From Pocillopora damicornis (Eukaryota), in contig NW_020845487.1 of assembly GCF_003704095.1 (NCBI RefSeq), positions 62,001 through 126,000 on the forward strand: a stretch of 64,000 nt of DNA. Reading direction: 5' to 3'. Below the pieces are notes generated by a model. The model did no database searches. It worked only from the letters and a program-made list of their open reading frames with translations, and had not been told where the DNA came from. Shown one piece after another: positions 1 to 24,042 of this stretch; within the stretch, counting starts at the first letter, position 1, and each line of letters begins with the position of its first letter. The translations under genes and the position numbers were made by a program.

Positions 1-2
1 GG

Positions 3-3000
3 ACGATGCGGAAGTTGCGGAACCATAGATAAATAGCTCAGTGCATTTGGCATGGCGCGGTAAGCAGGATGGTATGCATTGAAGAGATTGTAAAGAGATG
101 ATGGGGCAGTGGTGTGTATAACTCCAACGCTTCCAGGATTTGGAGCTTGATAAAGAACTCTCGGAATTACGGGACCTTGCTGCTGATATAGTGGAACGAG
201 CTGGCGTTTTCCACGTTTTCTAGGCGGTATGGAGGATTTTGCCGTTTCGACGTGAACGCGAACATCAGGAGAATCATCTTTTGGAGTTGCGGGCAGGTAT
301 TGTTGTAATGGTAATGGAAAACGGGATGGTGCGACTGGAGATCCTTCAAGCTCCTGAATAGCTTTTAAGTTAGCGCCAAAACCAGGCAAATGCTCCATGT
401 TGATTCCGTTTGGATTAGGTATCTCCTGCGCTTCCAGTAAAGCTTGATTCTGTAGAGCAGCTGTCTCAAGTTGATTGTAAACTGAGGGTATTGAATCGGT
501 AGATTCTGGTAAGATTAACTGTCTCTTTGTCACGTCATAACTTGGTTTGTAGGATCGCTTTGCAACTTCATGTTCACGGATCGAGGTGTTCCCTGGTATA
601 ATAGACATCTTCTCTTTTTGTTCAATGGACTTGTGTAAATCTTCTACATCATTAATTGGAGAGACAGATCCATAAAGTGAATGAGAGCCCATGAGCTGTC
701 TTTTCGTTAGTGGGTGTTGATTTATTGTTGATCGCAAAGTCTTTTTCTGAGTCTGGTCGGTGATAATTGTTTCAGTGTTTTCTGTTTTGGTTGTAGTTGT
801 TTTCGAGATTGTCGACTTTGTTATCTGTGGTTTTGATGACTTCCCGTTTAATTTATCTTTTGCTGAATGTTCAATGTGAGACCGATGAAAGTGATGAAAA
901 TCTAGCTCATCTCCATGGATCACATGATTTGGAATTCCCACATAGCTCATACTGTGTGTTACTGTTGAGCCTTGAGGAAGGAATCTGGCTGCAGGACGGA
1001 GAATAAATGAATCATGAGAGTGTAGAATAGGCTGGTTAACTGCGGGAGGTGGTTGATGGAATACTATGGGTGGTTGATGATACACAACAGCAGGCCGATG
1101 CACTACTACCGGCGGTTGATGGTAGATTATAGGTGGACGATGAAGTACTATAGGCGCTCTGTGAACTACGATGTCTGGTCTATGATAAATTTCAGGTGGT
1201 GGATGATAAATGATTGGGGGACGGCTTACCACTATGTCATTCTTTCTGGAGGCTTTTACATCTTTTACCTTTTGAGGATGTAAAATATATCCCTTTTTTC
1301 CCTCTGGTCTGGTTTCCTGTTTTCTGTGCCTTTTCTTTGGTTTTTCTGACTTAGATCTATATTTGAGCACATGCGATTTTCCGAAAGCATTGCCGTATCC
1401 ATAATTCCACCTGCCACCGAAAAAGTTTGGAGCTCCTAAGTAGGTTCCACTGTGTTGTACATGACTTGTGAAAGGAACGAATGCAGGATGAGCCATGTAT
1501 TGTTCATGTGCATGGAAAATCGGTTGTCTCACCATGGGTGCTGGTTGATGAAATACTACTGGTGGCTGATTATAGATAACAGGAGGACGATGAACTATAA
1601 CGGAAGGTTGATGATAGACAACGGAAGGTTGGTGGAGTACAATATCAGGGCGATGCACTATGATATCTGGTTTATGATACACCTCTGGTGGTGGGTGATA
1701 TACAAGTGGCGGCCTTCTTAGTACCACCTGATTCTTCTTACCACCTTTGCCACTCTGATGGCCCTTTTTGTGAAGTTTATCCTTTAGGGAATGATAAGTT
1801 GTTGTTGAATTTTTATCGGGTTCCACCGAACGTTGCTTCCTTATTCCTGCTTTCTTGACTGCACGATGAGGACTTTTGATATGTTTTTTTTCGCTATGCT
1901 TTTCGTGGGTTTTACTGAGTTCTTGGGCTTTGTCGAGGTGTTTCTCAACAAGAGACTTGCTGAATGCACGGGATTTGCTGAATGCGGCAGGGTTGGGACG
2001 AGGCAAAACTCTCCGATTTACAGGAGCAGTGGGCGCGACGTAGTTTGCTCTGTATAGTGAAGGTGAATACCATGGACCTTGGAAAGCGTTCCATCTTTGC
2101 CAACTGTTCATATTGGGTATAGCGTTATTGGAAAAACCGTAACCATACCTCCATCCCCCAGCATAGTAATGAGGTGCTCCAACGTACGTATGCGTATGCT
2201 TTATCTGAGAGGAATACGGAACAAAAGAGGGACGGCTATGGTAAATATCATGTGCAGTGTACATTGGCTGATGTACCATAGGCGAAGGTTGATGAAAAAC
2301 AACTGGAGGTGGATTATAGATAACTGGAGGACGATGGACAACAACAGATGGCTGATGATACACAACTGATGGTTGATGGATTACAAAGTCCGGTCGGTGA
2401 ACGATGATATCAGGTCTGTCGTATATTTCAGGTGGCGGATGATAAATCAAAGCTGGACGTTGTATAACAACCATGTTCTTTTTATGTCCTTTGCGGTGAC
2501 GCTTTTTATCCTCCTTTTGCGGATGCAGGGAAACGCTCTTCGCTTGTGCGTTTCCGCTTAGTTTCTTTTGTGCTCTTTGAGTACCTCCCTTAATATTGTG
2601 CGCCAAGAGTGTAGACTTAAGAAGCGTTTCTGAAGCCTTTGAAGATTCAGATGTGTCCCGTTTGGATTTGCTTCGGGGAGCCTTTTTCGAATGGGTGATT
2701 TGATTCCCTTCCTTTCCTCTTTCAATGGTTCCCACTGATCCTTTTTTAGACCCTTTTTCTACTTTAGATTTGTAAAAGGCATGCCCCATGAAATGTCCAA
2801 TACCATGTCCAAAATGCCCAGGGTAAAAGTGTGGTGCTCCCACGTAAGAACCAGCGTGCGATAAATGTGACATGAAGGGCACGAAGTGAGGATGAGCCAA
2901 GTACGTCTCATGAGCGTGAAAAATTGGCTGATGTACCATTGGCGATGGTTGATGAAAAACAACTGGTGGTTGATGATAAATTACCGGTGGACGGTGTACT

Positions 3001-6000
3001 ACGACAGATGGTTGATGGAAAACAACTGAGGGCCTGTGAATAACAAGGTCTGGTCTGTGCACAACTATGTCTGGCCTGTGATATATTTCTGGAGGAGGGT
3101 GATAGATAAGTGGTGGACGGTGCATTACTACTAAATTTTTCTTGTTGCCTTTGGAGCTATCTTCTCTGCTTCCCTTTTCACTAATTTTTCGAACCTCAGT
3201 TCTGTGAAGCGTTCTTCTACTCTCTTCACTTTCCCGTTCGATATTTTTGCTCTTGTTTTTTTGTTTTCCTGCTTTCTCAACTTTTGATTTTCCAAAGGCA
3301 TGATGGAAACCATAATCGTAGTTGCTTCCTTCCCATCCCCAGTCACCAGGGTAGAAGTGTGGTGCACCTACGTAACTATGGGTATGGTGAACGTGTGATG
3401 CAAAAGGAACAAAATGGGGGTGCGCCAAATAGGTGTCATGTGAATGGAAGATTGGTTGGTGGACCATAGGTGACGGCTGATGGAAGACAACAGGAGGTTG
3501 ATGGTAAATCACTGGAGGTCTATGTACCACTACAGAAGGCTGATGAAAAACTATTGAAGGTCTGTGAATAACGATATCCGGTCTGTGCATGACAACATCT
3601 GGCTTGTGATAAACTTCTGGTGGTGGGTGGTAAATAAGAGGAGGTCGCCGCATAATTACAAGGTTCTTTTTGTTTCCATTAAGGGTAGTTTTTGTTTCGT
3701 TTTTTAGTTTTACAACGTCTTCCAGGCTCTTTGCTTCTTGTTCTAAAGTTCTTTTGCTACCCTTGTACACCTCCTTGTCCCCTTGCTTCTTTTGTTTCTT
3801 GTGAACCTTGGCTACATCTGATTTACCAAACGCACTGTGGAAGCCATACATATCTCCTCCCATTCCCCATCCACTACCATAAAAGTGAGGTGCACCGACG
3901 TAGTTTCCACCAGTAGACACGCTTGATGTGTAAGGCGTAAAGTATGGATGAGAGAGGTAAGTATCATGAGCGTGGAAAATCGGCTGGCTTACCGTTGGTG
4001 ATGGCTGGTGGAAGACAACCGGCGGCTGCTGATAAACCACTGGCGGCCTGTGGACCACCACAGAGGGTTGATGATAAACAACTGGTGGCCTGTGAATAAC
4101 AATGTCTGGTCTGTGCATCACAACATCAGGCTTGTGATATACCTCTGGCGGTGGATGGTAGATTAGTGGTGGACGTCGGATAACAACCTGGTTTTTCTTT
4201 TTAGACTTTCTCTCTGATTTTGGTTTTACTTCCTTGTCATTTTTCGTTTGGTCATCTTTTGCTGCTCTTTTATGTTTGTCTCTCTGTGACTCTTTTGACT
4301 TTTTTCCTTTTAAGGATTCAGAACTCGTTTTGGGTACTTTTGATTTACCAAAGGCGGGACTAAAAAAGCGAGGCTGGCTCCAGCCATAATTCCATCCACC
4401 AGGATAATGGTGTGGGCTTCCTACGTAGGTGGATGTGTGCTGTATGTGGGAAGAATATGGCACTGGCACAGGATGAGCAACATAGGTATCATGAGCATGC
4501 ATAATCGGCTGATGAACTAACGGTGGAGGTTGGTGAAAGACTACTGGAGGTTGTTGGTATATAACTGGAGGTCTGTGGACAACGACTGAAGGTTGATGAT
4601 AAACAATCGAGGGACGATGTATAACGATGTCCGGTCGATGAACAACTATGTTTGGTCTGTCATATATCTCGGCTGGTGGATGGTATATCATCGGTGGCCG
4701 AGCTATAACAACTTTGTTCTTTTTGTGTCCTTTCGATTTTTCTGACGATTTTGCTTTTGTTTCGTCTTCATCACGAGTGTCGCGCTTTAATTTTGAATGA
4801 AATTTGTCCCCGCTCTTGCTTGTTTTCTTCTGGCTGTTTTTTTCGTCCTTGCTTGTCTTTCTATTCTCTACCTTTTCAACAGCTGATTTTCCAAACGCAT
4901 GACCAACATATGCACCGAACGGCTGACGATGGAAATAGTGTGGAGCTCCAACATACGTTGCTGTGTGATGAATCTGGGATGTGTATGGTACTGGAATAGG
5001 ATGGGCAAGATAAGTGTCATGGACGTGCATAATTGGTTGGTTAATCATGGGCGGAGGCTGGTGAAATATAATCGGTGGTTGGCGGTAAATTATTGGAGGT
5101 CTGTGAACCACAACTGAGGGTTGATGATACACTATTGATGGTCTATGCACCACGATATCTGGGCGGTGCATTATTACGTTTGGTCGATCATAGATCTCCG
5201 GTGGCGGATGATAAATCATTGGCGGTCTGTGAACAACAACTAGGTTCTTTCTTTCGCCTTTTTTATCCTCAGATTTTTCACCGACCTCTTTTGCCGTGGT
5301 ACTCTTAGCAATATGCCCTCCCTTGCCAGAGTTGTCTTCTTTTGATACCTTTGAGTTATCTTTTTCTATGGATGACTTTCCAAAAGCAAATCTCATTGGA
5401 TGAAAAAGATGTGGTACGTGGTACACGGGTGTTGGATGGTGCAGTACTATAGGAGGTCTGTGTATTATAACGGGAGGTCTGTGCACTACAACAGGAGCTC
5501 GATGGATAAGAATAGGTGGACGGTGTACGACCAATGGAGGTGGATGCATCACAACGGTTGGCTTATCAAATATATCTGGAGGTGGATGATATACTATTGG
5601 TGGCTGATGAACTACAAGGCCGACGTTCTGTTTCTTTGCGTTTTCATTATTTACCAATTTTTCAGTGCGTGAACGGCTTGCCTCTCTTTTTTCGTCCGGC
5701 TTTGTTTTCTGTACGTCTCCTCTTTCCTTTGTTTCAGACTCAATCTTGTAACTGGAGGTGTTCATTCGTTCTATATGCGATTTACCGTAAGCAGTTCCTT
5801 GAACAACAGACCCAAAGTAATTCCCAGAAGGATGCAAATAAGGCGACGTAGGAACCATTATGTGCTGTGCATGCGGTGTGAAGATTTCGTGGGAGTGAAT
5901 CACAGGGGTGTGAATTATCGGGGGCGGGTTGTGAAAGACGACTGGCGGCTGGTGATAAATTATCGGAGGATGGTGGACGATCGTTGGTGGTTGTTGGAAC

Positions 6001-9000
6001 ATTATCGCCGGCCTGTTGTAAACCAGTGGTGGTAAGTGCATCAAAATATCTGGTTGTCGATATACTTGAGGGGGTGGGTGATAAATAAGAGGAGGTCGAT
6101 GTATAATAACGACGTGTTTGCGGTGTCCTGGGTGAGCAAAAGCACTTATAGGACGGAGATGGTAGAAGCGCTTACTTCCGCGATGGTGATGACTGTGTCG
6201 GTGATGTTGGCTGTGATGATGATGGCGATGATGGTGATGGAGGTGACGTTTGCTCAATTCAGCTGACCTCCGTTTCCTAGACGCGTTGTTGTTCTTTTTC
6301 AGAAATGAGTCTTTGAGATGTTTCCTTTCGTGTTTCTTTTTGGATGACTTACTTTTGCTATTTTCTACTTCTGATCTTCCAAAAGCAGGTCCATACGAAG
6401 AATAGCCATATGCGTCATATGCGGGAGATGGTGTGTATCCATTAATACCAGAATAGCCGTAATTAGATGCGTAGTGGTATTGGGCTGTCTGTTCTGCAGG
6501 TAGATGTCCCGAAAGCCCCCATCCGTAATCGTTATGCCCAGGATAGAGATGAGGCGCTCCTACATATGTTGAGGAGTGTGCTATGTGGCTGACTTGTGGG
6601 TGAAACACAGGGTGAGCTACATAGGTATCATGGGCATTGTAAATTGGCTGACTAACCATTGGTGAGGGCTGATGAAACACTACTGGAGGCTGTTGATAAA
6701 CCACCGGTGCTCTGTGCACGACTACAGATGGCTGGTGGTAAACGATCGAGGGTCGATGAATTACAATATCTGGTCTGTGCACTACGATATCTGGCCGGTC
6801 ATAAATCTCAGGTGGCGGATGATAGATCATAGGAGGTCGTGCGACGATGACTTTATTCTTTCTCTCTCCTTTGGTATGCTTGCTTTTTTGCTGTGTTGGT
6901 GCGGCATGGACTTTCCCTAAATGTTTACGTTCGTGGTCTTTTAACTCATTAGTGTACTTCTGGTGTTCTAGGTGCCCTTGGTCACTGTTCTTTACGGGAT
7001 TTGCGCCCTGTGGTTTTGAAACTTCTGTTCTTCGAGCCCAGTGTGCTTGGTTTAGCGTGGGAAACATGTGTCCCGTTGGACCGCGAGGGATGTTGCCCGG
7101 ATAGTTAGTGACCCCGCCATGGGGTAAGCCTACGTAATGGCCGGCGTCATTTACAACGGAACCCATGTGAGATGCAAAAGCCATTGGGTGAACAACAAAA
7201 CTGTCATGTGAATACAGGACAGGCTGGTTAACTGCTGGAGCAGGTTGATGAAAGACGATTGGAGGTTGATGATAAACGACTGCAGGTCTATGAACAACAA
7301 CAGGAGGCTGATGATAGACAATAGGTGGTCTGTGGATAAGAATAGGAGCTCTGTGTACAACAATGTCTGGTCTGTGGTATACCTCTGGTGGTGGATGGTA
7401 GATAATAGGAGGCCTGTTGACGACCACATCTTTCTTCTTCTTACGGCTATCTTTTTTCTTTCTGTCATGATCTGTTTCCACAGCGCTTTTCTTTGACTTC
7501 TTGTCTGCAACAGAGCGTTTCGGCTTGTTAGAACTTTTGCCTTTGGAATCCTCGTTAGTAGCGTCTTTAAATGATTGGTCAGATTGTGATGTTTTCATAA
7601 TGTCGTTCTCAGTACTTTTATCTTCTATTCGTGCAACGGTGGATTTCCCATAGCCACAACCAGGGCAGTGCATGTGAATCATATGCATAGGATAGTGATG
7701 AATCAGGTGGGAATGATGAACTATCATTTGCGGTCCCTTGTGTATTATAATTGGCGGTCGATGGAAGAGTATTGGGTGGTGGTGAATGATATATGGACGA
7801 CGATGAATTATTATTGGTGGCCGGTGAAATACTAATGGAGGGCGATGAACTATTATGGGTGGTCTGTGTATAAGGACTGGTTGACGATGAATTATGATAG
7901 GGGGGCGATGTACTAGTATTGGTGGTCTGTGAAAGACGATTGGGTGACGGTGGACTATTATGTCTGGCCTGTGAACAACTATTGAAGGTCGATGAATCAT
8001 ATGGCTCGGTGGATGATACAATATTGGTGGCCTGTGAATTATTAGTAGTGTCTTTTTGGTGCTATTGGTGTTTTTGTCTGCGTTTTCGTCAGGTGTAGAG
8101 GTTTGAGTTTCCTCACTACTACGTTTATACATTTCATAAGCTGTCTCACCTTCAAATGTTGTCCGAGGGTCTGCTAATGCTCGCTGTATCCTTGCACTGG
8201 CCCCAATACGACTGTTAACGCTGCTGGTCAGCGGTTTTGTGTAAGGACTCCAAACATCGTCGATGGAGCGTTGGATTCTTGTTGCTGTTTCCCCCGAAAT
8301 AACAGTGTGTCGCTGGGGAGACAAGGAAAATTCACTAGAATACCCACTTTCCACTGGGTCGCTGAAGTATGGAAGCAAGCTGTGAAGGCTTCTCTGAATT
8401 CTAGTTTGGGCCCCAACAGGACTACGTGTCTCCCACTGCTTATGGATCAACGAATCAGACAATGCTCGCGCAATTCGTTCTCCTGCTCCAAGTTTAGCAC
8501 TGTTCTCCTTATTTTGCTTTGCACCATCTGCATGCTCCGTCTTGTTACTTTGTTTTTCATTGGTCGGCGTATCAGATTCTGTTTTTGTCTTCGTTTTCTC
8601 GCCAGAGTCTTGGTCATTTTCCTCAACCCTATGAACTTTGTCTCTACGGGTGGCTTTCATGGGGACATGAGATTTTCCAAAAGCTCCAGTGCCAATCCCA
8701 TGCATAAATATCTCTTCGTGAGGAACACCCTTGTATGTTGCTACGTGGCGGACATGTGAAGCATAGGGAATAACAACAGGCTTAGTAACCCAGGTATCGT
8801 GTGAATGCAGAACTGGTTGATGGACCATTGGTGGTGGTTGGTGAAAAACTATGGGAGGTTGATGGTAAACAATGGCTGGACGGTGAACCACTACTGGTGG
8901 CTGATGATAGATAATTGGGGCACGATAAAGTACGATAGGAGCACGGTGCACAACAATATCGGGTCTGTGATAAATCTCTGGTGGTGGATGGTAGATGATA

Positions 9001-12000
9001 GGTGGTCTATGAATGACTACGGAGTTCTTTTTGTTTGCTTTCTCTGTAACCTCCTTTGCCTTGTGATATTTCACCGGGAAACTATGACTTTTGTGAAGTT
9101 TCGTTCCTGTTTCTGTTTTGTCTTTGCTCCTTGTGAGAGGAATATGCTTTCGTCTAATGCGATGCCCTTTTCTCCCTGGCTTCGACTTTTTGTGACCTCT
9201 CTTGCCCTTCACAGTGGCCCTTGTGTCCCCCTTTTCTTCTTCAGTCTTTTCCTTCGCAGGTACCTTGGATTTTCCATAAGCCATGTAATGAACACCTCCG
9301 CCGTGTCCGTGATAATATGCATGTGGTATATGATACAGGTGTCCCACGTGATGCATTCGAGATCCGTATAGTCTCACCAAAGGTCTGTGGACGTAAGTGT
9401 CATGTGACCTGAATACTGGTTGGTGTACTACAGGCGGAGGTTGGTGGAAAATAAGAGCCGGCTGATGGTATACAATGGCTGGCCTGTGCACAATAACTGG
9501 TGGCTGATGGTAGATAATTGGAGCTCGGTGAATAACGATAGGAGCACGGTGAACCACTATTTCTGGCCGGTGATAAATTTCTGGTGGAGGGTGATAAATC
9601 ACCGGAGGGCGTCTCACAATAACTGCGTTTTTCTTTCCTCCTTTTTGGCTCTTTGCCTTTTTAGTTGTCAGACGTGAAGTAACGTTTTCTTTTCTTTCGT
9701 GAAAAGGTTTGTGGGAGGAATCTTCCTCTAGCTTTGTTGAGTTGGTATCACCACTTATTTTGTTTCGTGCGGATGCTTCCTCTTCTAACGATTTGGTGTG
9801 TTTCAAAATATGTGACTTGTAGAATGAGTATCCGTGTCCTCCTCCAAAGTGATGAACGGTGTAAGCGTCTGGAACGCCAACGTATGTGTGATGATGCAGC
9901 ACTCGCGAGGAGTAAGGTACCACCACTGGGTGAGAAATCCAGGTATCATGGGACTTTAGCACTGGCTGATGAACCATTGGTGGCGGCTGATGAAATACCA
10001 ATGGAGGCTGGTGATACACTATTGCTGGACGATGCACAACAACGGGTGGCTGGTGATAAAATATCGGTGCTCGGTGAATCATAATTGGAGGTCTATGGAC
10101 AACAATTATTGGGCGATGATAAATTTCAGGTGGCGGGTGATATATTATTGGAGGCCGTCTCACTATCACAGTGTTCTTTTTTCCTGCTTTTTCGTTTGTC
10201 TCATTCTTTGCTTTCTTACTGTTGTCCTCAAAGGAGGTCTTTTTCGAGGCAACTGCTGTAATGTTGTTACTGTCTGCAACAGTGGCGTTCTCTGACGAAG
10301 AAGAACCTTCTATTTTTGATCTTTTTCCTATGGGTGGGGGTCTTCCGAACAGTGGATTTCCGTAATTTGTAATAACGTTAGGCACCCCTACGTAATGTCC
10401 AAAATCTCGTACAACAGAGCCATGATGCGTTGCATAAAATGATGGATGGACAGTGAAAGAATCATGCGAATATAGAAGCGGTTGACTAACAGCAGGAGGT
10501 GGTTGATGAAAAACAATTGGCGGTTGATGATACACCACGGCCGGCCGATGAACAATTACGGGTGGCTGATGGTAGATAATGGGTGGTCTGTGTATCACTA
10601 GGGGAGGGCGGTGAACGACTATATCTGGGCGGTGATAAATCTCTGGTGGAGGGTGATAAATTATTGGAGGGCGATTGACAACTACGTCTTTCTTCTTTTT
10701 GTTTTGTGTGCCGTCTTTGGAATCGTCTCCGTCGTCCTGTTCTGTTTCCCTTCTTAACTTAAGTTTCCCTTTAATGCGCTCTGACGAGGTGTCTCTTTTA
10801 TTTACTACGTCGACGTCCATATTTTTGTAGCTTAATTTTTCCTTGGACCCCTCAGTTGACGTAATAAAGTCATATTGATCATAGATTTCTCTCTTTTTTA
10901 AGACCTTTGGTTTCCACAAGTTTGTGAAATAAGCCATGTAATCGCCCAAACTATCACGCTTTGTTTTCTTGAAATGATCTGGCTGTGTGCTGTTCTTAGC
11001 TTGATGTGGTACTTTTCCTTTTCTGTAAGAGCAATGTGCCCCATGACATCCCTCTCCATAGTCACCAGAGTACACGTGGGATGGAATTCCATAGTATGTC
11101 TTCGCATGGGAAACCATTGATGCTGTGTGATACACCATTGGCTTTGTAACCCAAGTATCATGCGAGTGTAAGATTGGCTGATGAACAACTGGCGGAGGCT
11201 GATGGAATACTATCGGTGGTTGGTGATATATTATTGCTGGTCGGTGAACGACTACGGGAGGCTGATGATAAATTATTGGTGGTCGATGTAGCATAATTGG
11301 CGCTCGATGAACCACAATATCTGGTCTGTGATATATCTCAGGTGGCGGGTGATAAATGATAGGAGGACGGTGCATGACAATTGAATTTTTACGATTTCCT
11401 TTAACTTCCTTTGGCTGCTGTGCGTGTGGGTGCGACAGGCTATGGGTCTTTGTATCATTTTTCTTTTCGTCGGATTTGGCATTTCTTCGGTATTGATGTC
11501 GCTCGTGTTTTCGTGAAGTAAATACATTGAGTCGGTGATATCGTTTTAAAGTTTTCTCCCAACTTTTGATATTCACTTTCCGTTTGCTTGCCTTCCCCGC
11601 ACCATGCTGTTTGTACAATGGGGCCTTTCCAGTATCGTGTTTGTCTGTTTCATTTTTCTTACCCGACAGAATTTTAGTTTTCTTAAAGGCCATCCTTGGA
11701 GCCTCAGAAGGTGAATTAACATTCCTAGCACCTAGTGATCTTACAGGGATTTCGTTGGTAGGCGCCATGCCTTGCATACCACCATTAACTCCTCCTGGTA
11801 AACCTTCCATTGCTCCCATAGGCCCTAGAGAATTAAGGCCTGCTGTACCCATGTTGCTCATGTCATTGATACCGCCAAAAGTGTTTATATTGTTCATTTG
11901 ATTTGCACTATTAAAATTGTTCAGTCCGTTCATTCCATTCATCATAAAATTTTGTGGATTCACTCCACCGAGTAGACCAGGTGGTGGATTACCAGCAACG

Positions 12001-13892: not shown

Positions 13893-16800
13893 TATGTGGC
13901 TTTTTAGTACATTAAAACTTTCCCAAGAAAATGAGCGCGTTCTCTCCAACCATTGTTTTGTTATTACATCACAAGTAGTTTCTATCGCCGGTCTGTGAAC
14001 AGTAAAAAGATGATATAAGGGGCGCGGAATTTGGATTAAGTCTTCTTATCTCATAAAACCAGATGGAACACCTGTTAGTTTCCAATCAAAAGTATACTTT
14101 GTGACAGGTATTCTTGTTACGGCAATCAAAACCTCCCTCTATGAGTGGTGAACTCGCTCTATGAGGTGCACAAAATACTGGTGCCTCTTTAAGTTCAATG
14201 GACAATTAAAGTGTGGGGACTTTACACCAGAAATACACAGTCACAATAACCTATTTTTTTTACTCACATAAATACTTGCAAAGTATCGAAGAAGGAAAAC
14301 ATGATTAAGCATTCTCTGTCCACCAGAGAAGCAGCGTTGCGGTTCACATCACATAACAATGATAATTAAATGTTTTTGATTTGCTTTAAGAACTCTTCGC
14401 TGACGAAATATTGGGAATTGATGTATGTGTTCAGATGTTTTAAACATTGAACTCATTTTCATTCTGTAACATGTTCAAGAGGCGATGTTTTGACTACCGC
14501 CTGCCTTATGAACAAAATGTTGGTGTCATGTCAAAGGATACAAAATAAGATATAGCTTTCTTTAAATTAAACGCTTCAATGCATTTCCTTCTATTTTCGC
14601 GGAAAAGTATGTAAACCACCTTCTAGTCAAGTGCTTGTTTTATTATTTTTTTTATTTTAACGAACCCAAAGTGGACTTAACCGAGAGGCAAACAAATAAT
14701 TTTACCAGGAAGTAACTGATAAACAAACTGTTGATGCTTTGACCAATAATTGCCCCGATGCAGAAACAATTTAAATTTAGTTTTCAAACGAAATTCTAAA
14801 ACAAAGCGGACGCAAAGCAGACTTAACCAGGTAACAAACAAATACTATTACCTTGATGTAACAATTAAACAAACTTTTGATCCTTGGATGGGTAATTGCC
14901 CCAATGCCGTAAAATGCTTTAAATTTAGTTTCCTAAGGATTTCTTAAACAAAACTATAGCTGAAAGATTTCATTCACAATATTTTATTTTGACTGAAATG
15001 CATTTGGATGACAGTTGAAATTTCAGTTCAGGTGACCGGGTACAACTCAGATTTTAGTGCGACAGACCATTAGCCTCAAGAACTTGGTGATGTTCTCATT
15101 TCCGTCAAAATTCAGTTTCGTATTTCAACATGCATCCAATTTAGCATGATTTCTCAAGCGATTTTACCATGGGGACTTTTTGTATTAATCGGTTTACATT
15201 TCAGCACGCGATGTAATTAATTAAGCACCGTTTTAAGGGATTGTTGGTCGGTTAAACACAATATGTTCGTCAGATAAAATATTTGTCGACTTTTTTTGGA
15301 TATTGCGTTGTAAGGAGGGGGCTTTAAAGTATTAAACGACCTCTTGTAACTGAGCCCTCACTTTTAAAGCAGATTTCGAAAAGTATTAGTATTGAAAATC
15401 TTACTTCATCGCCTCCTCACTACTTGTCTTGCCAAAATCTATTTCCGTTGGAAAGATGATCGTAGCTGCTGATCACGTTTTGTGGTAAACGCTGAGACGC
15501 TTTTCTTCAGAAAACAGGCTTTATTTGTCATTATTATTATGTAATGATAGTTTTAGAAGGCCAACTACAGTTGCGAAGATCAAGTGTCTATTGCACTTTG
15601 TTGGAATGATAGCTGCTTATTTTTGTAACCGAGGAAAATAGGATGCATTTTTTAGGGCTATGTTTCGGGTCACTGTCAATAGAAAACTGCAGAGAAGTCG
15701 GCTTAATTATTTTTACAAAAATTTCTTAACCGTTGCTATCTTCTTCTCTTTTTTCTTTTTTCTAAACTTGCTTCCGATAATGGAAAAGCTACTGGTGGCC
15801 GAAAATAAGTCTTACGAAGCTTACCGAACAAATTCTAACAAACAGGCCTTAAGTGAAACCCCTGCAAATGGTCTGCGCTTCGCTAGATTCTTTAATGCAT
15901 CTATAGTTTCAGTTAAATGACTGAAAACTCGTCAGCGTTCAATACGGGTTGTACTTTTAGGTGAAAAACTCCAATTCAAAGGAGATACCCAACTCATCAA
16001 GGGAGAATGTGTAATCTGTTATGTTTCCAAAAGAACTAACTCGATGGAGCTTATTGTCCCTCAATTGTCTCTCTTCCGCTAGTTCCTTTCCATGCAGCAT
16101 CAGTTTAAATATCATAGCATTACCGTGCATTGTACTCATTAACCGTTTAACTTATATTATTAGCTTTCTTTACGAATCGGAATGGGACGTGGTGTGTCTG
16201 TGCGTATCATGGTTAAATCGATGACAATTTTGAGTTTATTTGCGTTGTTCACTACTCTTCTAATATCCTTCATGAATGGTGTCTGTAGACAGAGGTAAAC
16301 TATAGGGTTACTCGGTAAATACGACACTTTCACTTCAAAGGAGAAGACTTTTCAACTTCTTGACGAAAAAACACCTGTCTTTATGAGTTGTTCACCTTTC
16401 ACACCTTATGACTATGTTGACAAAGCGTCGACTTATATCTAATTATAATCACAGACGAAATTAATTTAACTCTTTAAGGGTTCAACCAAAACAAAAGAGT
16501 TGTTGACCTTTTTCAACTACCATCAAACAAACGCCGAACCACTTGTTGACCAAAATCTCGATTAGCCGTGTTCAAACTGAGGATGTGACAAAGTTGATTA
16601 ACGCTGGCTGCATTTTGGGGTTTTTGTAAAATATAATTGGTTACAGAATTCCTCGGAGACTTCTAATTGACTTAAATGCGTTTGCTTGCGTATCGATTGT
16701 TTGTTTTGCCGTGTACATTAATATTTTATGAAAGACTGTCGTTTGCCTGTTCAAATTATACAAAATAATTGGAAAGAAAAACCAAGTTCTTGAATAAAAT

Positions 16801-17375
16801 GCGTATTAAAAAATCTCGGGCAAAATGATAATTAGTAGTTTTTGTTATATGCGTTAAAGAGTGACTTAATTTTATTTTTTAGTTAGGTACTTGTTCAGTG
16901 CAACCGACCCGCTGTAGGAGGTAACCAAATATGGCAAGGTACCCGCTGGATCTTTATCGCACTAACACAGCCATAACAACTTGAACAAAGCAAAATCAAT
17001 CTCTCCTGACTTGCCTAGCAGGTGACCTAAATAAGTTATTCATGAAAGTAACCATTTATTTCTCTCTAAGACAAAATAAAAGAAATTAATTGTATTACTT
17101 GCATTTTAAGCGTGAAACCTCATTTAAATGAAGAGAAATACCAAAAGGAAATTGGGTTTTAAAGTTCATGGTTAAGTGATAAAATTTATTGGATAACTTT
17201 CACAGATTCATTGTGTTTCGTCTTTTAAATGTTTTATTTGACACGTTATTTTCAGTATTACAAAAGAATATTTAATAACTTACGTAAGTGTACTTTTCTC
17301 TTATCTGCAACACTAGCGCGGTCTTATCAAGGGTTTAGTTTGGTCTTTCGTGTCTCGCGGAAGACTATGATCAAC

Positions 17376-20300
17376 ATGAGACTAAATCGCTTTCTCTTTT
17401 TAGCATTTCTGGTCATAACAAGTCTTCTCGTGGTGCACAGTAAACCGCTTGCCCAAGATAACGAAGAGAAAGAGCGTTTGAAAAGAAATGAGCCCGAAGA
17501 AGACGCACCTGACTCTTCAGGCGAAGAACAAACGAGTAAGGAAGTTGAAAACCCAGCGGGGGATGAACAAAACGAGCCTACAGAAAAAGGAGATGAAAAA
17601 CAAAATCAACAGAATGAGCAAAAAATAGATCATGAAAATTCTGTTGAGCAAAACGGTGAAGATGCTTCTACAAACGAAGCGGCTGATGAAGCGGAAGAAA
17701 ACAGCAAAGATGAAAAGAGGAAAGGTTCCAAGAGATGGCTCCACCATGGGTATGCTGGTTATGGAGGGTGGGGTTATCCTGGCTGGGGTGGAATTCATGG
17801 ATATGGAATTTATCCTGGTGCATTTGGGCCTGGGTATGGTCTGGGCGCTGGATATGGTCTCGGAGCTGGTCTTGGAGCTGGTCTCGGAGCTGGTCTCGGA
17901 GCTGGTCTCGGAGCTGGTCTTAGCTGGCCTGGCTACTGGTATAGGTCTAGCGTACCAAAATACGCGAAAACTCAAGGTTCATCCAAAAAGTTTGGTGTCG
18001 AGCATCCTTTGGGCTATGGTCTCGGATATTTTGGTGGTTATGGTGGTTATGGCGGTTATGGTATTTATGGCGGTCTTGCCGGCCCGTGGAGTGGATACTA
18101 TGGTGGGCCTTACGGGTATGGATTTGGTTTTCCAGGATATGGCTTTATGCCAAACCCAGCTTTGTTTCCCACGTCCTTTTTCAGGTCTGGTGTTCCAACA
18201 AAATCAGATAAGAAAGGCGCAAACAGAAGAGAAAATGTAGCTAAGAGATTTTATGGTTACGGCCATTTTGGTGTTCCCGCTGGGTTTGGATATCCTGGCT
18301 GGGCTAATTACGGACATCCTGGATTCGGTTTTGGAGTTCCTGCCTTTGGTAGCTATAGCCCTTTCCTTGGGTATGGACCTTTCGGTACTTGCTTCTATAA
18401 ATCCAAAATACCCAAAGACAAAAAGGACCGTAGTAAGGCGAAGCGAGACACAACTGGGAAAGTCCATAAGAAATGCTGTGGAGGATGCGGAGGATGCGGA
18501 GGATGCGGAGGATGCGGTGGATGTGGAGGATTCCTGGGCTGCGGAGGCAGCTACGGAGGACTTGGAGGATGTGGTGGATTTGGCCTAGGAGGATGGGGTG
18601 GATTAGGCTTAGGAGGATGGGGTGGATTTGGGCATGGCTTAGGATATGGAGGATTTGGCCACGGTGGATGGGGATGGGGCGGTTATGGCTATCCTCTATC
18701 TGGTGGGTGGGGCTTAGGAGGCTATGGCGCCTGGGGCCCAGGCTGTGGATTCTACAGATCAAAGGTTTCAGGACATGATAAACCGGAGAAACCTGAGAAT
18801 AAATCGAAACGGGAGGCTGATGACAATGAACAAACAGAAGACAAAGCTGAGGAAGAGCAAGCACCAGAAAGCTCAGAAACAAAAGATGACAAGAAAGACA
18901 AGAGTAACTGCGGCTGCGCACCACCATCATCGGACAACTCCGGAAACAACAAAGCTGGAAAAAGAAGTTGTTGCGGTGGTTCAGCATACTTGGGATTACC
19001 CTTTTATGGAGGTTATGGAGGATACGGGGGATGGTATGGCTCGGGATACGGCTATGGCTATCCTTTCCTAGGGTATGGCGGGCTAGGTTTTGGTTTAGGT
19101 TACGGTCGTGGTTTAGGTTATGGAGGATGCGGTTTCCCCTGTGGAGGTTCTCTTGAGGTAAGAACTAAAAAAAATGGATGTTATTAAATTTTCTTAGGAT
19201 ATATTAGAGCAACTTATCATGACGCTTACCATAGGAACTAACAGAACTTACCTGCTTGGTAAGATCTTAGGAGTGAGACAGTCAACATTTCAAATTCCAA
19301 ATTTTAAATTTCAAGACGTTCTAAGTATCCAATAATTTGCATTTCGATTTCCATGATTAATTTCTAAAGTGAAACGTTGAAGGTTTGTTATAAATACTAT
19401 CTTTTATCATGCTATAGCGACTGATACCTTTAACACTGTGTATGCAGACGATTGAACGTAAGGGCGCATTCATCTGCTGATTTATTTCGCGAAATTAGAT
19501 TGAGGATCTGAGCCAGAACAACACAGGACAGTAGACTTGGCAATTATTGAGATTTTGAGAGAAGTTATTGTTTCGTTTTCTTAAAAGGCTTTTATAGAAT
19601 TATGACAAGAAAGTTTACTGAAATTACGCTGAGATAAGCTCGTGTCACTCAATTATCAAAACGTAACAAAGAAAAGCATAAGTAGCAGTAGTTGCTGTCT
19701 AAAAAAAAAAAAACGAAACAAAACAGACCAAGTCTTTTAGGGAAATGTCCTTATGATTTGTTTTCATATGAGCCAAGCACAGACGTAATTTCCAACTGCT
19801 TGCATTGTTCGACGGTGTCTTTTTTTTCTTTGTATTCGTTGCCTCATGTAAATATCCATATTTTTATTTAACTGAAGTTGAAGCGAGCGAACGCGTTTTT
19901 GTGAAACAATTTGAGGTTATAATTATCTATCATAAATAGCTCCGGATTGACTGTTTGGCCTAAACACGGTAGAGGATATTGTAGCCCCATCAGCCGTACT
20001 TTCTCTGATTTACAAACTTTAATGAAAAAGAATTTCTAAAATTAAGCTAAAGAGGCTAAAAATGAGATCGGACTCGCGGACCATTCAAAATTTTTTCAGC
20101 TATTGGGAGCCATTTATACAAATGATTCTCATTTATTACCCATGTTAAGTCGGTGGCGTGTTCTTACACGTATCTCGAAATGTCAAACACGTTAATAAGA
20201 AGCTGATTGGCCCTCTATTTGTATCAAAGATAGTCTTAAGCAGGTAATACCTGTTAGTCGGTAAATCACGAGCCTGCTTTTTCCCTGTTTATACTGCTTT

Positions 20301-23300
20301 CTTGGTAAATTTCTACTGATACAGCATCTTCGAAGTCTTTCGCGCAGTATAAGCTAATCCCATGTTTCATACTCGTCACACCGACACCCTTTCTACCTCT
20401 TGGTAAGCGGTCTTACGGTTCAGACGAATATACCTTTAAAATCAGCAGCAATTTCTCACGTAAATTACGCACAAGCATATTAAAGCCCAAAACTAACCCC
20501 TATTTTAACCTTTTTTTTTATAATACATCTGATTTTCGTGCCAGACTACGCTGGTAACTCCCATTCTCAATTTTTTAGGTAACATAATTACGATTTAGCC
20601 GTGAAACCTTACAAATATAAATTTGAAAAATAATTACATTCCTATTTCTCTAACGTTTCATTCTTAGGCCTAACAAATGTATGCAACAACTTCACGCACT
20701 TTACTTCTATAGTTACGTGAGCTCGTTTCTGGGCTCTGTAATGTGTTAACTGTGCATTCAAATCTCATTTGCGAGCAATTATACTTTTTATGTCAATCAG
20801 GTTGTTGATCCATGTGATTGTGGATACACCACTATGGCTGGTCCTTGCGGTTGTGCTTCTTGCTGTGGAAAGTCAAAGATTTCAAAAGAGGAAAACGATT
20901 CTCAGAAAGAGAAAAGGAGCGCCGAAGCTGATAAAAAGAAGCAGTCTAAGCGATGCGGATGTGGAGGTTGTGGAGGTTGCGGAGGTTGCGGAGGAGGATA
21001 TGGAATAGGTTTTGGTGGGTGTGGTGGCTGTGGAGGATACGGTGGATGTGGTGGCTGTGGTGGTTGTGGCGGATGTGGCGGATGTGGCGGATGTGGCGGA
21101 TGTGGTGGGTGCGGCCACGGCGGCTGGGGCGGTCATGGAGATTGGTTTGGTGACGTCGGACACGGGGACTGGTTTGGTGACTTAGGCCATGGCTGCGGAG
21201 GATGTGGTTGTGGGGGATGTGGTTGTGGCTGTGGCGGATATGGAGGACATTGTGGATACGGAGGTCATGGATGGTATGGACATGGTGGTTGGGGTGGATG
21301 CGGTCATAGTTGTGGTGGCTGTGGTGGCTGTGGTGGCTGCGGCTGTGGAATTTTCCGATCTAAACTTGCCAAGAATGACAAGAAACAAACAGAAAAGCAA
21401 GCGAAAGATAGCTCGCAGCCCGCTCAAGATAAGAAAGCAGCACCAGATGCGGGAAAAAAGGAGGAAAAGGCAACTAAAAGGTGTGGACTTTGGGGTGGTT
21501 TTGGAGGATGTGGAGGATTCGGTGATCTTGGTGGATTTGGAGGTTGGGGAGTTGGCGATTGGAACTTCGGTGGTTGTGGAGGTCCCTTCGGAGGCTGGGG
21601 TGGATATCCAGGTTACGGCTATGGCTATGGAGGCTGTGGTAGCTGTGGAAGCTGTGGAGGTTGTGGAGGCTTTGGGGGATGTGGCTATGGGGGTTATGGT
21701 GGCTGTGGAGCCTCTTGTGCTGATGCTGGACCGTGGACATTTTTTAATGGCGGCTGCTGTAAATCTAACGTGGGTGAAAAGGGTTCTTCTGATAGTGCTC
21801 ATGATGAGAAGTCTCCAGGCAAAGAAGCTGCGCCATTGTCTGTTCAACCAGCTGGGGGACCTACACCTATAGCCAAAGCTGCCGCTGCTGGTGCTGTGAA
21901 ACCCGGTCAACCAGAACCAGCACCAGCATCAGCACCTGCTAAAACTCGGGATCAACCAGCAGCCCGAGAAAAAGCTTCCAAACGCTACGGAATCCCTGGC
22001 TTTGGAGGTTGTGGATACTGCGGGGGCTGTGGACGTGGTTTCGGAGGCTTTGGAGGATGCGGAGGGTTAGGATATGGAGGATTAGGATATGGAGGGTTAG
22101 GCTATGGAGGGTTTGGATGTGGGGGATTTGGTCATGGGGGCTATGGACTATTGGGTCATGGATTTGGTTTCCCCGGCGGCTATGGTGGTTATGGCTGGGG
22201 ATTTCCAGGTTATGGATATGGTTACGGTTTCCCATTAGGTTTTGCTCGATCAAAACTTCCCCAGAAGAATAAAGACGTGAGACCAAATACTCGTGGGGAA
22301 ATCCCTGTAGCAGACGGTTATGTACAAAAGAAGAAGCAAACTATTCATCTTGGATATGGTTATGCCAGTGGTGATAACTATCGTCTTGGATATGGATTTG
22401 GTGGGATGGGAGGTAGCTAACTCAATTTTTTTCCAAGTTCTTATTTAAAAGTCAATAATCGTAAATGTTTGATTAAGGAAAGAAAAAAATGGCCTGCCGG
22501 AATCAATTCTTACTACTTTGTTATTCGGCGACCCCACAGCTGAGGTAGAGAGTAAGTAATGGACTTCCAATGATCGTTAAACTTACTAACCAAAAACAAG
22601 TTAACAAGTGTGACTAATAGGATTTAATCCTATTACAGCCAGTTCAATATTTATGTTTTTGTCTTTGCATATATTACAGAATCGTTTTCATAAGCTCTTT
22701 TATTAAAAGGTCTTAGTGCAATTTGTATGCAAGATATGGTTATGTTCGCCTTTCCTAGGTTTAGCTGGCTATCATGGAGTTGGTGGCGTTACTGGAACAT
22801 CCGTCTATCGCTCTAAGATTCCAAAAACGAGTGTAAAGGGCTTTAAAAGATGGGGCTGGGGACATGGTGGGTATGGCGGACACGGATTCGGTCATGGTCA
22901 TGGAGGATGGGGATATGCGGCACCTTATGGTCATCCCATTACCCATCCGGGATTCACAAGCATCGGATTTCCTGGACATGCCCTGGCAACATTTGACGTC
23001 AAAAACAGCATCGCTCAGAAGCGGGGAAAACAAAAGCGACAGATAGTTCCCTTTGGTGCAGTGAGTCCTGGTCCACTGGCTTTACCTGCCACTCTGCCTG
23101 CTCCACTTCCTGCTCTTGCACCTCTGGCTTTGCCTGCTACATACCATGCTCCTGTGTATGCCCCAGTTGCACATCCTGTTGCCGCTGTCCCTTCCTACGC
23201 CGCTGTGCCCGCAGCAGGCGCACTACCAGCGACTGCTTTACCTGTTGGCTGTGAGTAGACTTTCTTTGTGTTTGTTGCGCCTCCTGGTCTCACGACAAAG

Positions 23301-24042
23301 TTTTGAATTTTATTGACGTCACTGCTATGATTGATAAGGTCAATGGTAAATTGTGGTCGATCTGATTTTTACAATAACATCTCATGTGCGTGCTGTTCTT
23401 GTTGTTTTAATTTGTGTCATGTAATGACTTCTACAACAAAATATGATTATCAAAATGAATTACATGACCATAGATTCTGGTACCCTGAACTGTTATAACC
23501 CACTTAGTTTTAAATTTTGTGCCGTTTGTATTGGCATCGCTATGTATTTCGTCGCGGTCATCTACTTCCAACCTTGCGAACCGAGAACCGACTTTCTTTT
23601 ACCGTGCCTTTTCTTTCACCTAGACAAGTTCTTCTCCAAATGTTACTCCGGGTATACCGGTCATAAAAGTCGGAATTTCGTCACTGGCCACTTTTCAGAA
23701 ATTTGCAATTGTTTTACGGAAGTAAACTTCTTCTCCGATATGGCGTGGATTGCTCAGCGTTGCGTTACATGTTGCATCATTTCTATCTTCGATTGTTCTC
23801 GACTAATGAGCGCGCGAGAATTATCACAATAATTGTTATTATTATTATTATTATTATTACTGTAATTATTATCACTGTTTCCCTATTGAATGTCACAGCA
23901 TGTTAACATGGGCTTATCTGATTAAATTATAGTGCACCTTGGTGGACCAGCCGTTGCCGGACTGGCGCTAGGCCGCTCTAATATGCCACAAGGTTTTGGA
24001 CCTTTTGGTAACATAAAAAGATCCGAAATGCCAGAAAAATGA
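17376..24042 (+). CDS. Gene B: secreted Gly/Tyr/Cys-rich polyprotein precursor, 4 coding exons, about 1,331 aa, 11 modules
   Basis: Exons 17376-19157, 20801-22412, 22759-23250, 23933-24042 (alternative ATG 17367). Junctions gag|gtaaga..aatcag| (phase 0), ag|gtagct..cctag| (phase 1) and ct|gtgagt..attatag| (phase 1) keep the frame; total 3,996 nt. Signal peptide MRLNRFLFLAFLVITSLLVVHS, acidic propeptide, then modules after KR/KK (WLHHGYAGYGG, FGVEH, FYGYGH, CCGGCGG, SCCGG, CGCGG, CGLWGG, YGIPG, QTIHLG, WGWGH, QIVPF). Confidence 0.85.

What the first reader, a model, noticed from the sequence alone, without database searches (positions are those of the whole stretch)
900..23990. Shared two-sided processing code: dibasic start, aromatic/Cys-x-[KR]-S end
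Seen: modules of unrelated sequence end with the same motif. Gene A: AFGKS (x7), AYGKS (x2), GYGKS, AFGRS, FYKS (x2), FHRS, i.e. 14 of 18 modules. Gene B: WYRS, FFRS, FYKS, FYRS, CGKS, IFRS, CCKS, FARS, VYRS, LGRS. Related ends in genes E-H: GKKS, CRKS, LRRS, CKKS (x2), CKRS. Module starts follow KR/KK/RK. Established: proprotein convertases cut after dibasic sites. Inference: the C-terminal motif is a second, often monobasic, site for a dedicated protease, so the cluster may share one maturation pathway.
Basis: partly seen in the sequence, partly recalled or inferred. Interest (0 to 1): 0.78.

Follow-up and report, generated by a model that had tools for sequence, protein, structure and literature searches.

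The report
Shared boundary motifs in coral polyproteins
A cluster of highly repetitive secreted coral proteins, including one 6,239-residue single-exon giant, marks the start and end of almost every module with the same short basic motifs, conserved as far as sea anemones, which most likely guide cutting of the precursors into many pieces, though no cut product has been seen yet.

Summary
Gene A is one uninterrupted minus-strand ORF (Met at 13892). It runs 4.8 kb past the window start and encodes 6,239 aa. All 14 of 18 quoted module ends are present.

Gene B is a 4-exon gene, with all three introns confirmed by RNA contigs. Its 11 K/R-free Gly/Tyr/Cys modules all start after KR or KK, and 10 end phi-x-[KR]-S. 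A matrix trained only on gene A ends ranks gene B module ends as its top seven hits.

Against the Nematostella orthologue, the boundary motifs are islands of conservation (59-65% identity; spacers 22%). K and R swap at P1. Both genes have a conserved R-x-K-R site after the signal peptide.

Processing is the best reading, at about 0.45, but it is unproven. The C-terminal site breaks the classical monobasic convertase rule, no protease is linked to the cluster, and Hydra-type orthologues mostly lack the end motif. No paper or Pfam family describes these proteins.

The parts
1..13892 (-). Gene A: the part of a single stop-free ORF that lies in the window. The start codon is at 13892-13890. The ORF continues 4,826 nt beyond window base 1 to a stop at L008:5173-5175, for 6,239 aa in total. 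The N-terminus has a hydrophobic signal peptide, then the mature start KPYPKQ, then a conserved R-D-K-R site.
   Evidence: Orthologues of 5,019-5,811 aa occur in other corals and in Nematostella (LOC116618347), and one of 3,822 aa in Hydra (LOC100210570).
879..11405 (-). Array of 18 Pro/His heptad modules. Each has [KR]K-[NKD]-x-V-V-x-x-RPP-I-I-Y-HPPPE, then about 10 H-x-P-P-phi3 heptads, then an H-S-H-D...Y-V-G-x-P-H tail, then a Gly/Tyr/Trp stretch, then the end motif (A-F-G-K-S-x-V-[EP]-K) and a 40-100 aa K/E/S/T spacer. First base of the P1 [KR] codon of the end motifs: 11021 (variant), 10322 (variant), 9818, 9272, 8675, 7646, 6377, 5783, 5378, 4889, 4346, 3824, 3290, 2771, 1958, 1379 and 884.
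   Evidence: Conservation by class against Nematostella: core 69%, start 65%, end motif 59%, tail 42%, spacer 22%.
1..878 (-). Beginning of the third module class, which forms the C-terminal 1,900 aa of gene A and lies mostly outside the window. Segments open [KR]R|Q-[LIVFM]; the Gln codons in the window are at 698, 521 and 203. Segments close with V-x-V-x-V-x-T-A-[KR]-S-x-[IV]-P; the one in the window has its P1 at 239.
   Evidence: KR|Q[LIVFM] occurs 16 times against 0.5 expected. V.[VI].V..[AS][KR] occurs 11 times against 0.1 expected.
17376..19157 (+). Gene B exon 1. It encodes a signal peptide, an acidic pro-region with R-L-K-R, four complete Gly/Tyr/Trp/Cys modules and the start of a fifth. 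Motif four-mers start at 17937 (WYRS), 18177 (FFRS), 18393 (FYKS) and 18750 (FYRS).
   Evidence: Coral orthologues P0001-P0004 keep the boundaries while the cores carry indels. The donor at 19158 is confirmed by RNA contigs of 4 runs.
20801..22412 (+). Gene B exon 2. It encodes the end of module 5, modules 6-8 and the start of module 9. Motif four-mers start at 20864 (CGKS), 21350 (IFRS), 21755 (CCKS) and 22241 (FARS).
   Evidence: The joints 19155/20799 and 22410/22757 (both GT..AG) are seen in RNA contigs.
22759..23250 (+). Gene B exon 3. It encodes the end of module 9 (VYRS at 22803), module 10 and the start of module 11.
23933..24042 (+). Gene B exon 4. It encodes the end of module 11 (LGRS at 23968) and the stop codon at 24040-24042.
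   Evidence: joint 23250/23933 in 2 runs.
37622..62793 (-). Their Cys blocks begin after KR, KK or RKR and end C/L-[KR][KR]-S. The end four-mers start at 37645 (LRRS), 43555 (CRKS), 51158 (CKKS), 54306 (CKKS) and 62523 (CKRS).
Evidence: I did not analyse them further here.

Best explanation
Genes A and B, and probably the neighbouring Cys-rich genes, encode secretory polyprotein precursors. Each precursor alternates two kinds of segment:
- Aggregation-prone, almost K/R-free or K/R-masked modules. These are Pro/His heptads, Gly/Tyr/Trp/Cys blocks, or Gln-initiated segments.
- Highly charged K/E/S-rich spacers.

In the secretory pathway, kexin/PC-type convertases would cut at R-x-K-R behind the signal peptide and at the KR or KK that precedes each module. 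Where Gln follows, it could then cyclise to pyroglutamate.

A second basic-residue-directed endoprotease would cut at or next to the [KR] of phi-x-[KR]-S-x-[VI]-[PE]-K at each module end. This enzyme is not a classical monobasic-site convertase. Where P2 is Gly (A-F-G-K), carboxypeptidase and amidating enzyme could leave a C-terminal amide.

The net result would be removal of the solubilising spacers and release of dozens of 50-170 aa low-complexity modules, probably building blocks of a secreted structural material.

Shown here: the architecture, the motifs, their enrichment, their conservation and gene B expression. Inferred: the cleavage itself, the enzymes and the fate of the products.
For: - The end motif occurs in three unrelated module chemistries and two genes. 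A gene A matrix finds gene B ends at ranks 1-7. Ten of 11 gene B modules, defined without using the motif, end [KR]-S, and 11 of 11 start after KR or KK.
- [KR]R|Q[LIVFM] occurs 16 times against 0.5 expected. The extended end motif occurs 21 times against 2.2.
- Identity to Nematostella peaks exactly at K-R-Q (11-12 of 16) and falls to 1-5 of 16 a few residues upstream. The end motif is 59% identical, against 42% for the tail and 22% for the spacer.
- K and R exchange at P1 among paralogues (21 K, 11 R) and at orthologous sites.
- In some modules and species a dibasic variant, Y-x-[KR]-K-G-x-V-P-K, replaces the monobasic motif.
- Ser at P1' uses all four TCN codons, which indicates selection at the amino-acid level.
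- Inside the Pro/His modules, 73 of 107 K/R residues are followed by Pro. Spacers are 29% K/R, with only 8 of 277 before Pro. Gene B modules are essentially K/R-free.
- Canonical R-x-[KR]-R follows the signal peptide in gene A and its coral, Nematostella and Hydra orthologues, and in gene B and its orthologues.
- The AF2 model of one module places the A-F-G-K-S region in a low-confidence stretch without predicted structure.
- The genome encodes several subtilase plus P-domain convertases.
- In cnidarian preprohormones, cleavage at KR, RR or a single R after Gly, and N-terminal pyroglutamate, are established (PMC7523074).
- Gene B is spliced and abundant in poly(A) RNA of several studies.
Against: - No cleaved product has been observed. 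A Nematostella peptidomics supplement contains none of six orthologous predicted N-termini.
- Only 3 of 32 end sites have K or R at P4, P6 or P8, and aromatic residues sit at P2 or P3. This is contrary to what I recall of classical monobasic convertase sites.
- Hydra-type orthologues keep the modules and the KK[ND] start but mostly lack the end motif. End cleavage is therefore not essential to the protein family.
- The modules are far larger than typical convertase-released peptides.
- No protease is linked to the cluster.
- Alternating hydrophobic and Lys-rich blocks also typify unprocessed elastomeric proteins.
Confidence: 0.45

Rival explanations
1. The proteins are unprocessed block copolymers. 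They stay intact as giant modular structural proteins, in the manner of elastin, resilin or silk. The charged spacers act as hydrated linkers or cross-linking domains, and the conserved junction motif is an assembly, docking or cross-link site rather than a scissile bond.
For: - Hydrophobic low-complexity blocks alternate with Lys-rich hydrophilic blocks.
- The aromatic-x-K-S-x-V-P motif loosely recalls lysine cross-link contexts such as collagen telopeptides and elastin KP domains. This comparison comes from my own knowledge and was not tested.
- Hydra orthologues function without the end motif.
- There is no evidence of cleavage products.
Against: - Arg replaces Lys at P1 in a third of sites and at orthologous positions. 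That is incompatible with lysine-specific chemistry such as lysyl oxidase, transglutaminase or hydroxylation.
- Spacer lysines are not positionally conserved (22% identity and 42% gaps against Nematostella).
- The KR|Q signature and the R-x-K-R sites are hard to explain without proteolysis.
Confidence: 0.25
2. Only the dibasic sites are cut. Convertases cleave at R-x-K-R, KR and KK. The phi-x-[KR]-S-x-[VI]-P-K element stays on each product as a short basic C-terminal tail, with a non-proteolytic role such as a sorting signal, matrix or polyanion binding, or an enzyme docking site.
For: - The dibasic sites fit known convertase specificity, whereas the end motif does not.
- Conservation extends five residues past the basic residue (S-x-[VI]-[PE]-K). 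That is more than a simple P1 site needs.
- In the C-terminal class the spacer between the end motif and the next KR is only 10-25 residues.
Against: - The conserved element marks exactly the transition from K/R-free module to K/R-rich spacer in three module classes.
- The dibasic variant [KR]-K-G at the same position looks like an alternative cleavage site.
Confidence: 0.2
3. The motif is a historical relic. Genes A and B share the boundary and spacer element by common descent or exon shuffling, and intragenic repeat homogenisation maintains it without any specific function.
For: - The genes are adjacent and head-to-head, and both mature N-termini start K-P.
- Gene A modules are tandem duplicates.
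Against: - The motif persists at orthologous positions in Nematostella while its flanks diverge.
- Synonymous variation at the Ser and Lys/Arg codons shows amino-acid-level selection.
- The motif also sits in a third, non-homologous module class.
Confidence: 0.05

Closest known systems
Multi-copy prohormone and propeptide precursors cut by kexin/PC1/3/PC2-type convertases, for example cnidarian RFamide and LWamide preprohormones
   Same: - A signal peptide and many product units on one precursor.
- KR or RR sites, and single basic residues after Gly.
- Gln directly after the cut, which could become pyroglutamate.
- Cleavage sites more conserved than spacers.
   Different: - The products here would be 50-170 aa low-complexity modules, not 4-40 aa peptides.
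- The precursor is 6,239 aa long and encoded in one exon.
- The C-terminal signal is an extended phi-x-[KR]-S-x-[VI]-[PE]-K, mostly without Gly and without an upstream basic residue.
- In cnidarian neuropeptide precursors the N-terminal side is usually not basic (PMC7523074). Here it is.
Fungal Kex2-processed repeat proteins, such as Ustilago Rep1, yeast alpha-factor and Candida Ece1 (from my own knowledge)
   Same: - Secreted tandem-repeat precursors cut at KR in the Golgi.
- Rep1 yields self-assembling structural peptides.
- Spacer trimming occurs by a second activity.
   Different: - They come from a different kingdom, and no homology was detected (no Pfam hit).
- The fungal spacers are short dipeptide repeats removed by exopeptidases, not 15-100 aa charged spacers with their own conserved leading motif.
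Profilaggrin and the epidermal differentiation / keratin-associated protein clusters of vertebrates (from my own knowledge)
   Same: - A giant His-rich tandem-repeat protein encoded in one huge exon and cut at linker peptides into units.
- Genomic neighbours are Gly/Cys/Tyr-rich and ultra-high-Cys proteins.
   Different: - The vertebrate proteins are cytosolic, with an S100 head and no signal peptide. No S100 domain is present here.
- The linker motifs and proteases are unrelated. The resemblance is architectural only.
Elastin-type structural proteins with alternating hydrophobic and Lys cross-linking domains (from my own knowledge)
   Same: Hydrophobic low-complexity blocks alternate with Lys-rich hydrophilic blocks, and an aromatic residue lies near the junction Lys.
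   Different: - K and R are interchangeable at the conserved position.
- Spacers are polyampholytic and unconserved.
- Dibasic KR|Q signatures are absent from elastins.

Membership tests
Convertase-processed secretory polyprotein precursor | N-terminal signal peptide | tested here: met
   Read by eye only; no predictor was available. Gene A and gene B each begin with a hydrophobic leader followed by K-P, and this is conserved in orthologues.
Convertase-processed secretory polyprotein precursor | Product units flanked by dibasic (KR, RR, KK) or R-x-[KR]-R sites, enriched over chance | tested here: met
   - 11 of 11 gene B modules and 18 of 18 gene A heptad modules follow [KR][KR].
- [KR]R|Q[LIVFM] occurs 16 times against 0.5 expected.
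- R-x-K-R follows both signal peptides.
Convertase-processed secretory polyprotein precursor | Cleavage sites conserved while spacers diverge | tested here: met
   boundaries are 59-65% identical to Nematostella, against 22% for spacers.
Convertase-processed secretory polyprotein precursor | Mature cleaved products demonstrated | not testable with these tools
   No proteomic data were reachable. Literature and one peptidomics supplement were negative.
Classical monobasic convertase site (for the end motif) | Basic residue at P4, P6 or P8 and no aromatic residue at P2 (rule recalled from my own knowledge) | tested here: not met
   Only 3 of 32 instances have K or R at P4, P6 or P8, and P2 is Tyr or Phe in 8 of 32.
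Amidated-peptide precursor (X-Gly-[KR] signal) | Gly immediately before the basic cleavage residue | tested here: inconclusive
   Gly is at P2 in 13 of 32 end motifs, mostly in gene A heptad modules. It is replaced by Tyr, Ala, Ser, Phe or Cys elsewhere and in orthologues.
Elastin-like Lys cross-linked structural protein | Invariant Lys at the cross-link position | tested here: not met
   P1 is K in 21 and R in 11 instances, and K and R swap at orthologous sites.
S100-fused-type protein (profilaggrin family) | N-terminal S100 EF-hand domain, no signal peptide | tested here: not met
   There are no Pfam hits in the N-terminal 1,631 aa, and a signal peptide is present.

The most novel reading that the evidence does not exclude
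Anthozoans possess an undescribed maturation system. A dedicated endoprotease recognises phi-x-[KR]|S-x-[VI]-[PE]-K. Together with convertases acting at KR|Q, KR and KK, it dismantles giant single-exon polyproteins and their neighbours into dozens of K/R-free, self-assembling modules. Some modules would carry N-terminal pyroglutamate or a C-terminal amide, and they would build a secreted material such as a cnidocyst or surface matrix. The charged spacers would act as removable solubilisers.
Probability: 0.3. Interest if true: 0.8.

Novelty: new variant of a known kind. Interest (0 to 1): 0.62.

Why it matters
If the motifs are cleavage signals, three things follow:
- One pan-cnidarian gene of unknown function (Nematostella LOC116618347, Hydra LOC100210570) and its coral neighbours would become a defined system for how animals keep aggregation-prone structural modules soluble during secretion and release them on demand.
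- The system would point to a protease specificity not described in cnidarians.
- It would give exact, testable predictions of about 45 neo-N- and neo-C-termini, counting the modules of gene A and gene B.

Gene B is abundant in poly(A) RNA from adult coral samples, so the products are likely to be a quantitatively important but unstudied coral material.

If the proteins are not processed, the finding still defines a conserved junction element in a new family of giant modular proteins.

Tried and rejected
- **Pfam.** Scans of all parts of gene A, gene B and three neighbouring ORFs gave only sub-threshold or low-complexity hits (Chorion_3, Cuticle_3) and nothing else.
- **ESM Atlas.** A search with one gene A module gave no usable hit; the best score was 0.78.
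- **Structure prediction.** AlphaFold2 of one module with 25 aligned sequences gave mean pLDDT 58. Only one beta-hairpin exceeded 70, so no fold search was made.
- **Genome-wide DNA pattern.** A pattern for K-S-K-[VI]-P-K gave 75 and 79 hits against 74 and 83 for the reversed control. The pattern was too degenerate, so this says nothing either way.
- **Literature.** Searches by accession, by sequence snippets and by composition keywords found nothing on these proteins. Three nematocyst papers I looked into do not mention them.
- **Peptidomics.** The supplements of PMC6756747 (Nematostella) contain none of six predicted orthologous N-termini.
- **Nematostella synteny.** This could not be checked. 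The longest isoform exceeds the tool's 5,000-residue limit and the shorter isoform is not on record.
- **Linked protease.** None was found. All subtilase and P-domain loci lie on other contigs.
- **Cnidocyst (stinging-organelle) component.** I considered this but cannot support it. The only arguments are the pan-cnidarian distribution, the acidic pro-region ending in KR, and the spinalin-like Gly/His composition of some gene B modules.
- **Gene B searches.** Gene B was searched and analysed exon by exon only.
- **Cluster-member look-ups.** For 20 homologues these gave names for only two, both "uncharacterized protein".
Full report
**What is in the sequence**

The window is from a cnidarian (coral) genome.

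It is a single stop-free reading frame that begins at the ATG at 13892 and runs through window base 1. I fetched the adjacent 10 kb of the same contig. The frame continues for another 1,608 codons to a stop at L008:5173-5175, so the protein has 6,239 residues encoded without an intron.

The protein has these parts:
- A hydrophobic signal peptide, with the mature end beginning K-P-Y-P-K-Q.
- An R-D-K-R site about 45 residues further on.
- A roughly 800-residue N-terminal region that includes a Met/Asn/Gly-rich stretch.
- Eighteen tandem Pro/His heptad modules (window 11405-879).
- A 1,900-residue C-terminal region made of a different kind of module.

**Checking the observation in gene A**

The other four modules carry recognisable variants.

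Over 32 instances it reads:

| Position | Residues |
|---|---|
| P4 | A/G |
| P3 | F/Y/T |
| P2 | G/Y/A |
| P1 | K (21) or R (11) |
| P1' | S |
| P2' | K/H/S |
| P3' | V/I (29 of 32) |
| P4' | P/E (23 of 32) |
| P5' | K (17 of 32) |

The instances were picked with a pattern, so S at P1' is fixed by construction.

Every heptad module is preceded by [KR]K-[NKD]-x-V-V.

The 18 modules are homologous repeats (alignment A2). Repetition within gene A alone therefore proves little.

The C-terminal 1,900 residues fall into 16 segments. Each begins with Gln plus a hydrophobic residue directly after [KR]R. Most end with a V-x-V-x-V-x-T-A-[KR]-S-x-[IV]-P element, followed by a short basic spacer that ends in KR.

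Enrichment against residue shuffles of the protein:

| Pattern | Observed | Expected |
|---|---|---|
| [KR]R-Q-[LIVFM] | 16 | 0.5 |
| The beta-like V-x-V-x-V element | 11 | 0.1 |
| [KR]-S-x-[VILM]-[PE] | 21 | 2.2 |

**Gene B**

Gene B is a plus-strand gene of four exons: 17376-19157, 20801-22412, 22759-23250 and 23933-24042. I read the GT..AG splice sites from the sequence.

RNA contigs from poly(A) or oligo-dT libraries confirm them. The first intron is confirmed in four runs from four different studies, the second in three and the third in two. Depth over exons is very high and depth over introns is near zero.

I analysed and searched the exons one by one. The joined protein was not built or searched.

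I cut the exon translations into runs free of K, R, D and E, which makes no use of the motif. Reading the modules across the splice joints then gives 11 modules. All 11 start after KR (8) or KK (3). Ten end with [KR]-S as the first charged residue and its neighbour.

A position matrix trained only on gene A ends ranks gene B module ends first to seventh among about 1,300 positions. It gives three hits of 5 bits or more, against 0.1 expected.

So the same boundary element closes modules of three unrelated chemistries in two genes. The GKKS at 4307, however, is inside a gene A spacer.

**Conservation**

A full-library HMMER search with three heptad modules found giant orthologues of 5,019-5,811 residues. 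The only named ones are uncharacterised proteins of Nematostella vectensis (LOC116618347) and Hydra vulgaris (LOC100210570, 3,822 aa).

Global alignments show the end motif at orthologous positions in two other corals and in Nematostella, with occasional K/R exchange.

Identity to Nematostella by sequence class:

| Class | Identity |
|---|---|
| Heptad core | 69% |
| KK[N] start | 65% |
| End motif | 59% |
| Tail before the end motif | 42% |
| Spacer | 22% (42% gaps) |

Around the 16 KR|Q sites, identity to Nematostella is 11-12 of 16 at K, R and Q. It is 4-8 of 16 over the next eight residues and 1-5 of 16 upstream.

Ser at P1' is encoded by all four TCN codons, and P1 by five different Lys and Arg codons.

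Coral orthologues of gene B exon 1 keep every boundary, while the Gly-rich cores are riddled with indels.

On a contig of another anthozoan, the gene A and gene B orthologues are again head-to-head neighbours. The Gly/Ala-rich gene that lies at 31963-33846 in the window lies next to them there too.

Hydra and several Hydra-like fragments keep the modules and the KK[ND] start. They have only a few relict end motifs and no KR|Q series. The two-sided arrangement is therefore essentially anthozoan.

**What it most likely is**

No Pfam family matches any part of these proteins, and no paper mentions them.

Taken together, the features are those of convertase-processed secretory precursors:
- Signal peptides.
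- A canonical R-x-[KR]-R after the signal peptide, conserved from coral to Hydra in gene A and among corals in gene B.
- Dibasic sites in front of every module.
- Gln directly after many of those sites.
- Site conservation against spacer divergence.
- Modules that either lack K/R (gene B) or have it followed by Pro (73 of 107 in gene A modules), next to spacers that are 29% K/R.

In cnidarian preprohormones, cleavage at KR, RR or a single R after Gly, and N-terminal pyroglutamate, are established (PMC7523074). The genome has at least seven subtilase plus P-domain loci.

I therefore favour the reading that the spacers are removable, solubilising pro-segments and that the modules are released as separate low-complexity products. 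The K/R interchange at P1, and the dibasic [KR]-K-G variant found at the same position in some modules and species, favour a basic-residue protease at the module end over lysine-specific cross-linking.

**Why this is not settled**

- No product has been seen. A Nematostella peptidomics supplement lacks six predicted N-termini, although that study targeted small neuropeptides.
- The end motif lacks the upstream basic residue in 29 of 32 cases and often has an aromatic residue at P2. As far as I recall the rules, it is therefore not a classical monobasic convertase site.
- Conservation extends five residues downstream of P1, which could equally mark a docking or sorting element.
- No protease is linked to the cluster.
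- Hydra manages without the end motif.
- Alternating hydrophobic and Lys-rich blocks are also the hallmark of unprocessed elastomers.
- The AF2 model is too poor (pLDDT 58) to say more than that the motif lies in a region without confident structure.

**Comparison with known systems and novelty**

In how it works, the closest parallels are multi-copy prohormone precursors, fungal Kex2-processed repeat proteins and profilaggrin. In architecture it resembles elastin-like block copolymers. It is not a member of any of these families by sequence.

As a kind, a polyprotein cut at basic sites is known. Four things would be new:
- The family itself, which is pan-cnidarian and uncharacterised.
- Its scale.
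- A common boundary element shared across unrelated module types and neighbouring genes.
- The unusual extended C-terminal signal.

I rate it a new variant of a known kind, with interest of about 0.6. The predictions are exact and cheap to test by non-tryptic terminomics.

Noticed in passing
window 13893-17375: Genes A (minus strand) and B (plus strand) are arranged head-to-head across a 3.5-kb AT-rich gap (GC about 0.36-0.39). The same head-to-head pairing occurs on another anthozoan contig (L009), which suggests a shared bidirectional control region.
   Followed up: partly
window 13800-13892 (-) and 17376-17460 (+): Both mature proteins begin K-P right after the predicted signal-peptide cut (K-P-Y-P-K-Q and K-P-L-A-Q-D). 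Each has an R-x-K-R site 15-45 residues later, followed by an acidic stretch. This is conserved in orthologues, including Hydra for gene A.
   Followed up: partly
window 8030-7650 (-): One aberrant module consists of about 14 uninterrupted H-R-P-P-I-I-[VI] heptads. It lacks the usual H-S-H-D...Y-V-G tail and ends in a His/Met/Cys patch followed by G-Y-G-K-S.
   Followed up: no
window 8560-8180 (-): The spacer after module 5 carries four copies of a different short repeat ([AT]-R-I-[AQ]-R-[AS]-[LI]) in a roughly 130-aa insert. This repeat is not seen in the other spacers.
   Followed up: no
window 6270-6180 (-): The spacer after module 7 contains a run of about 30 residues made almost only of His and Arg. 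It is bracketed by K-R-R-S and S-K-R.
   Followed up: no
window 12230-11700 (-): The gene A N-terminal region has a Met/Asn/Gly/Pro-rich low-complexity stretch of about 170 aa. It is preceded by a His/Tyr/Arg/Pro-rich stretch that contains R-R|Q-F-Y.
   Followed up: no
window 31963-33846 (-), with the N run at 32667-32766: A 627-aa ORF with a Cys-rich block followed by a long Gly/Ala repeat is interrupted by the 100-N gap. Its orthologue sits next to the gene B orthologue on L009 (681-2375), so the wider cluster is syntenic.
   Followed up: partly
window 5783-884 (-) and 17937-23968 (+): Every Ser at the P1' position of the end motif uses a TCN codon, in all four third-base variants. None uses AGY, in gene A or in gene B.
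   Followed up: yes
P0013, P0017, P0018, P0022 (homologues): Proteins of about 1,000-1,300 residues from unnamed assemblies carry two or three heptad modules with the KK[ND] start, but no end motif and no signal peptide. They are probably fragments of medusozoan-type orthologues.
   Followed up: partly
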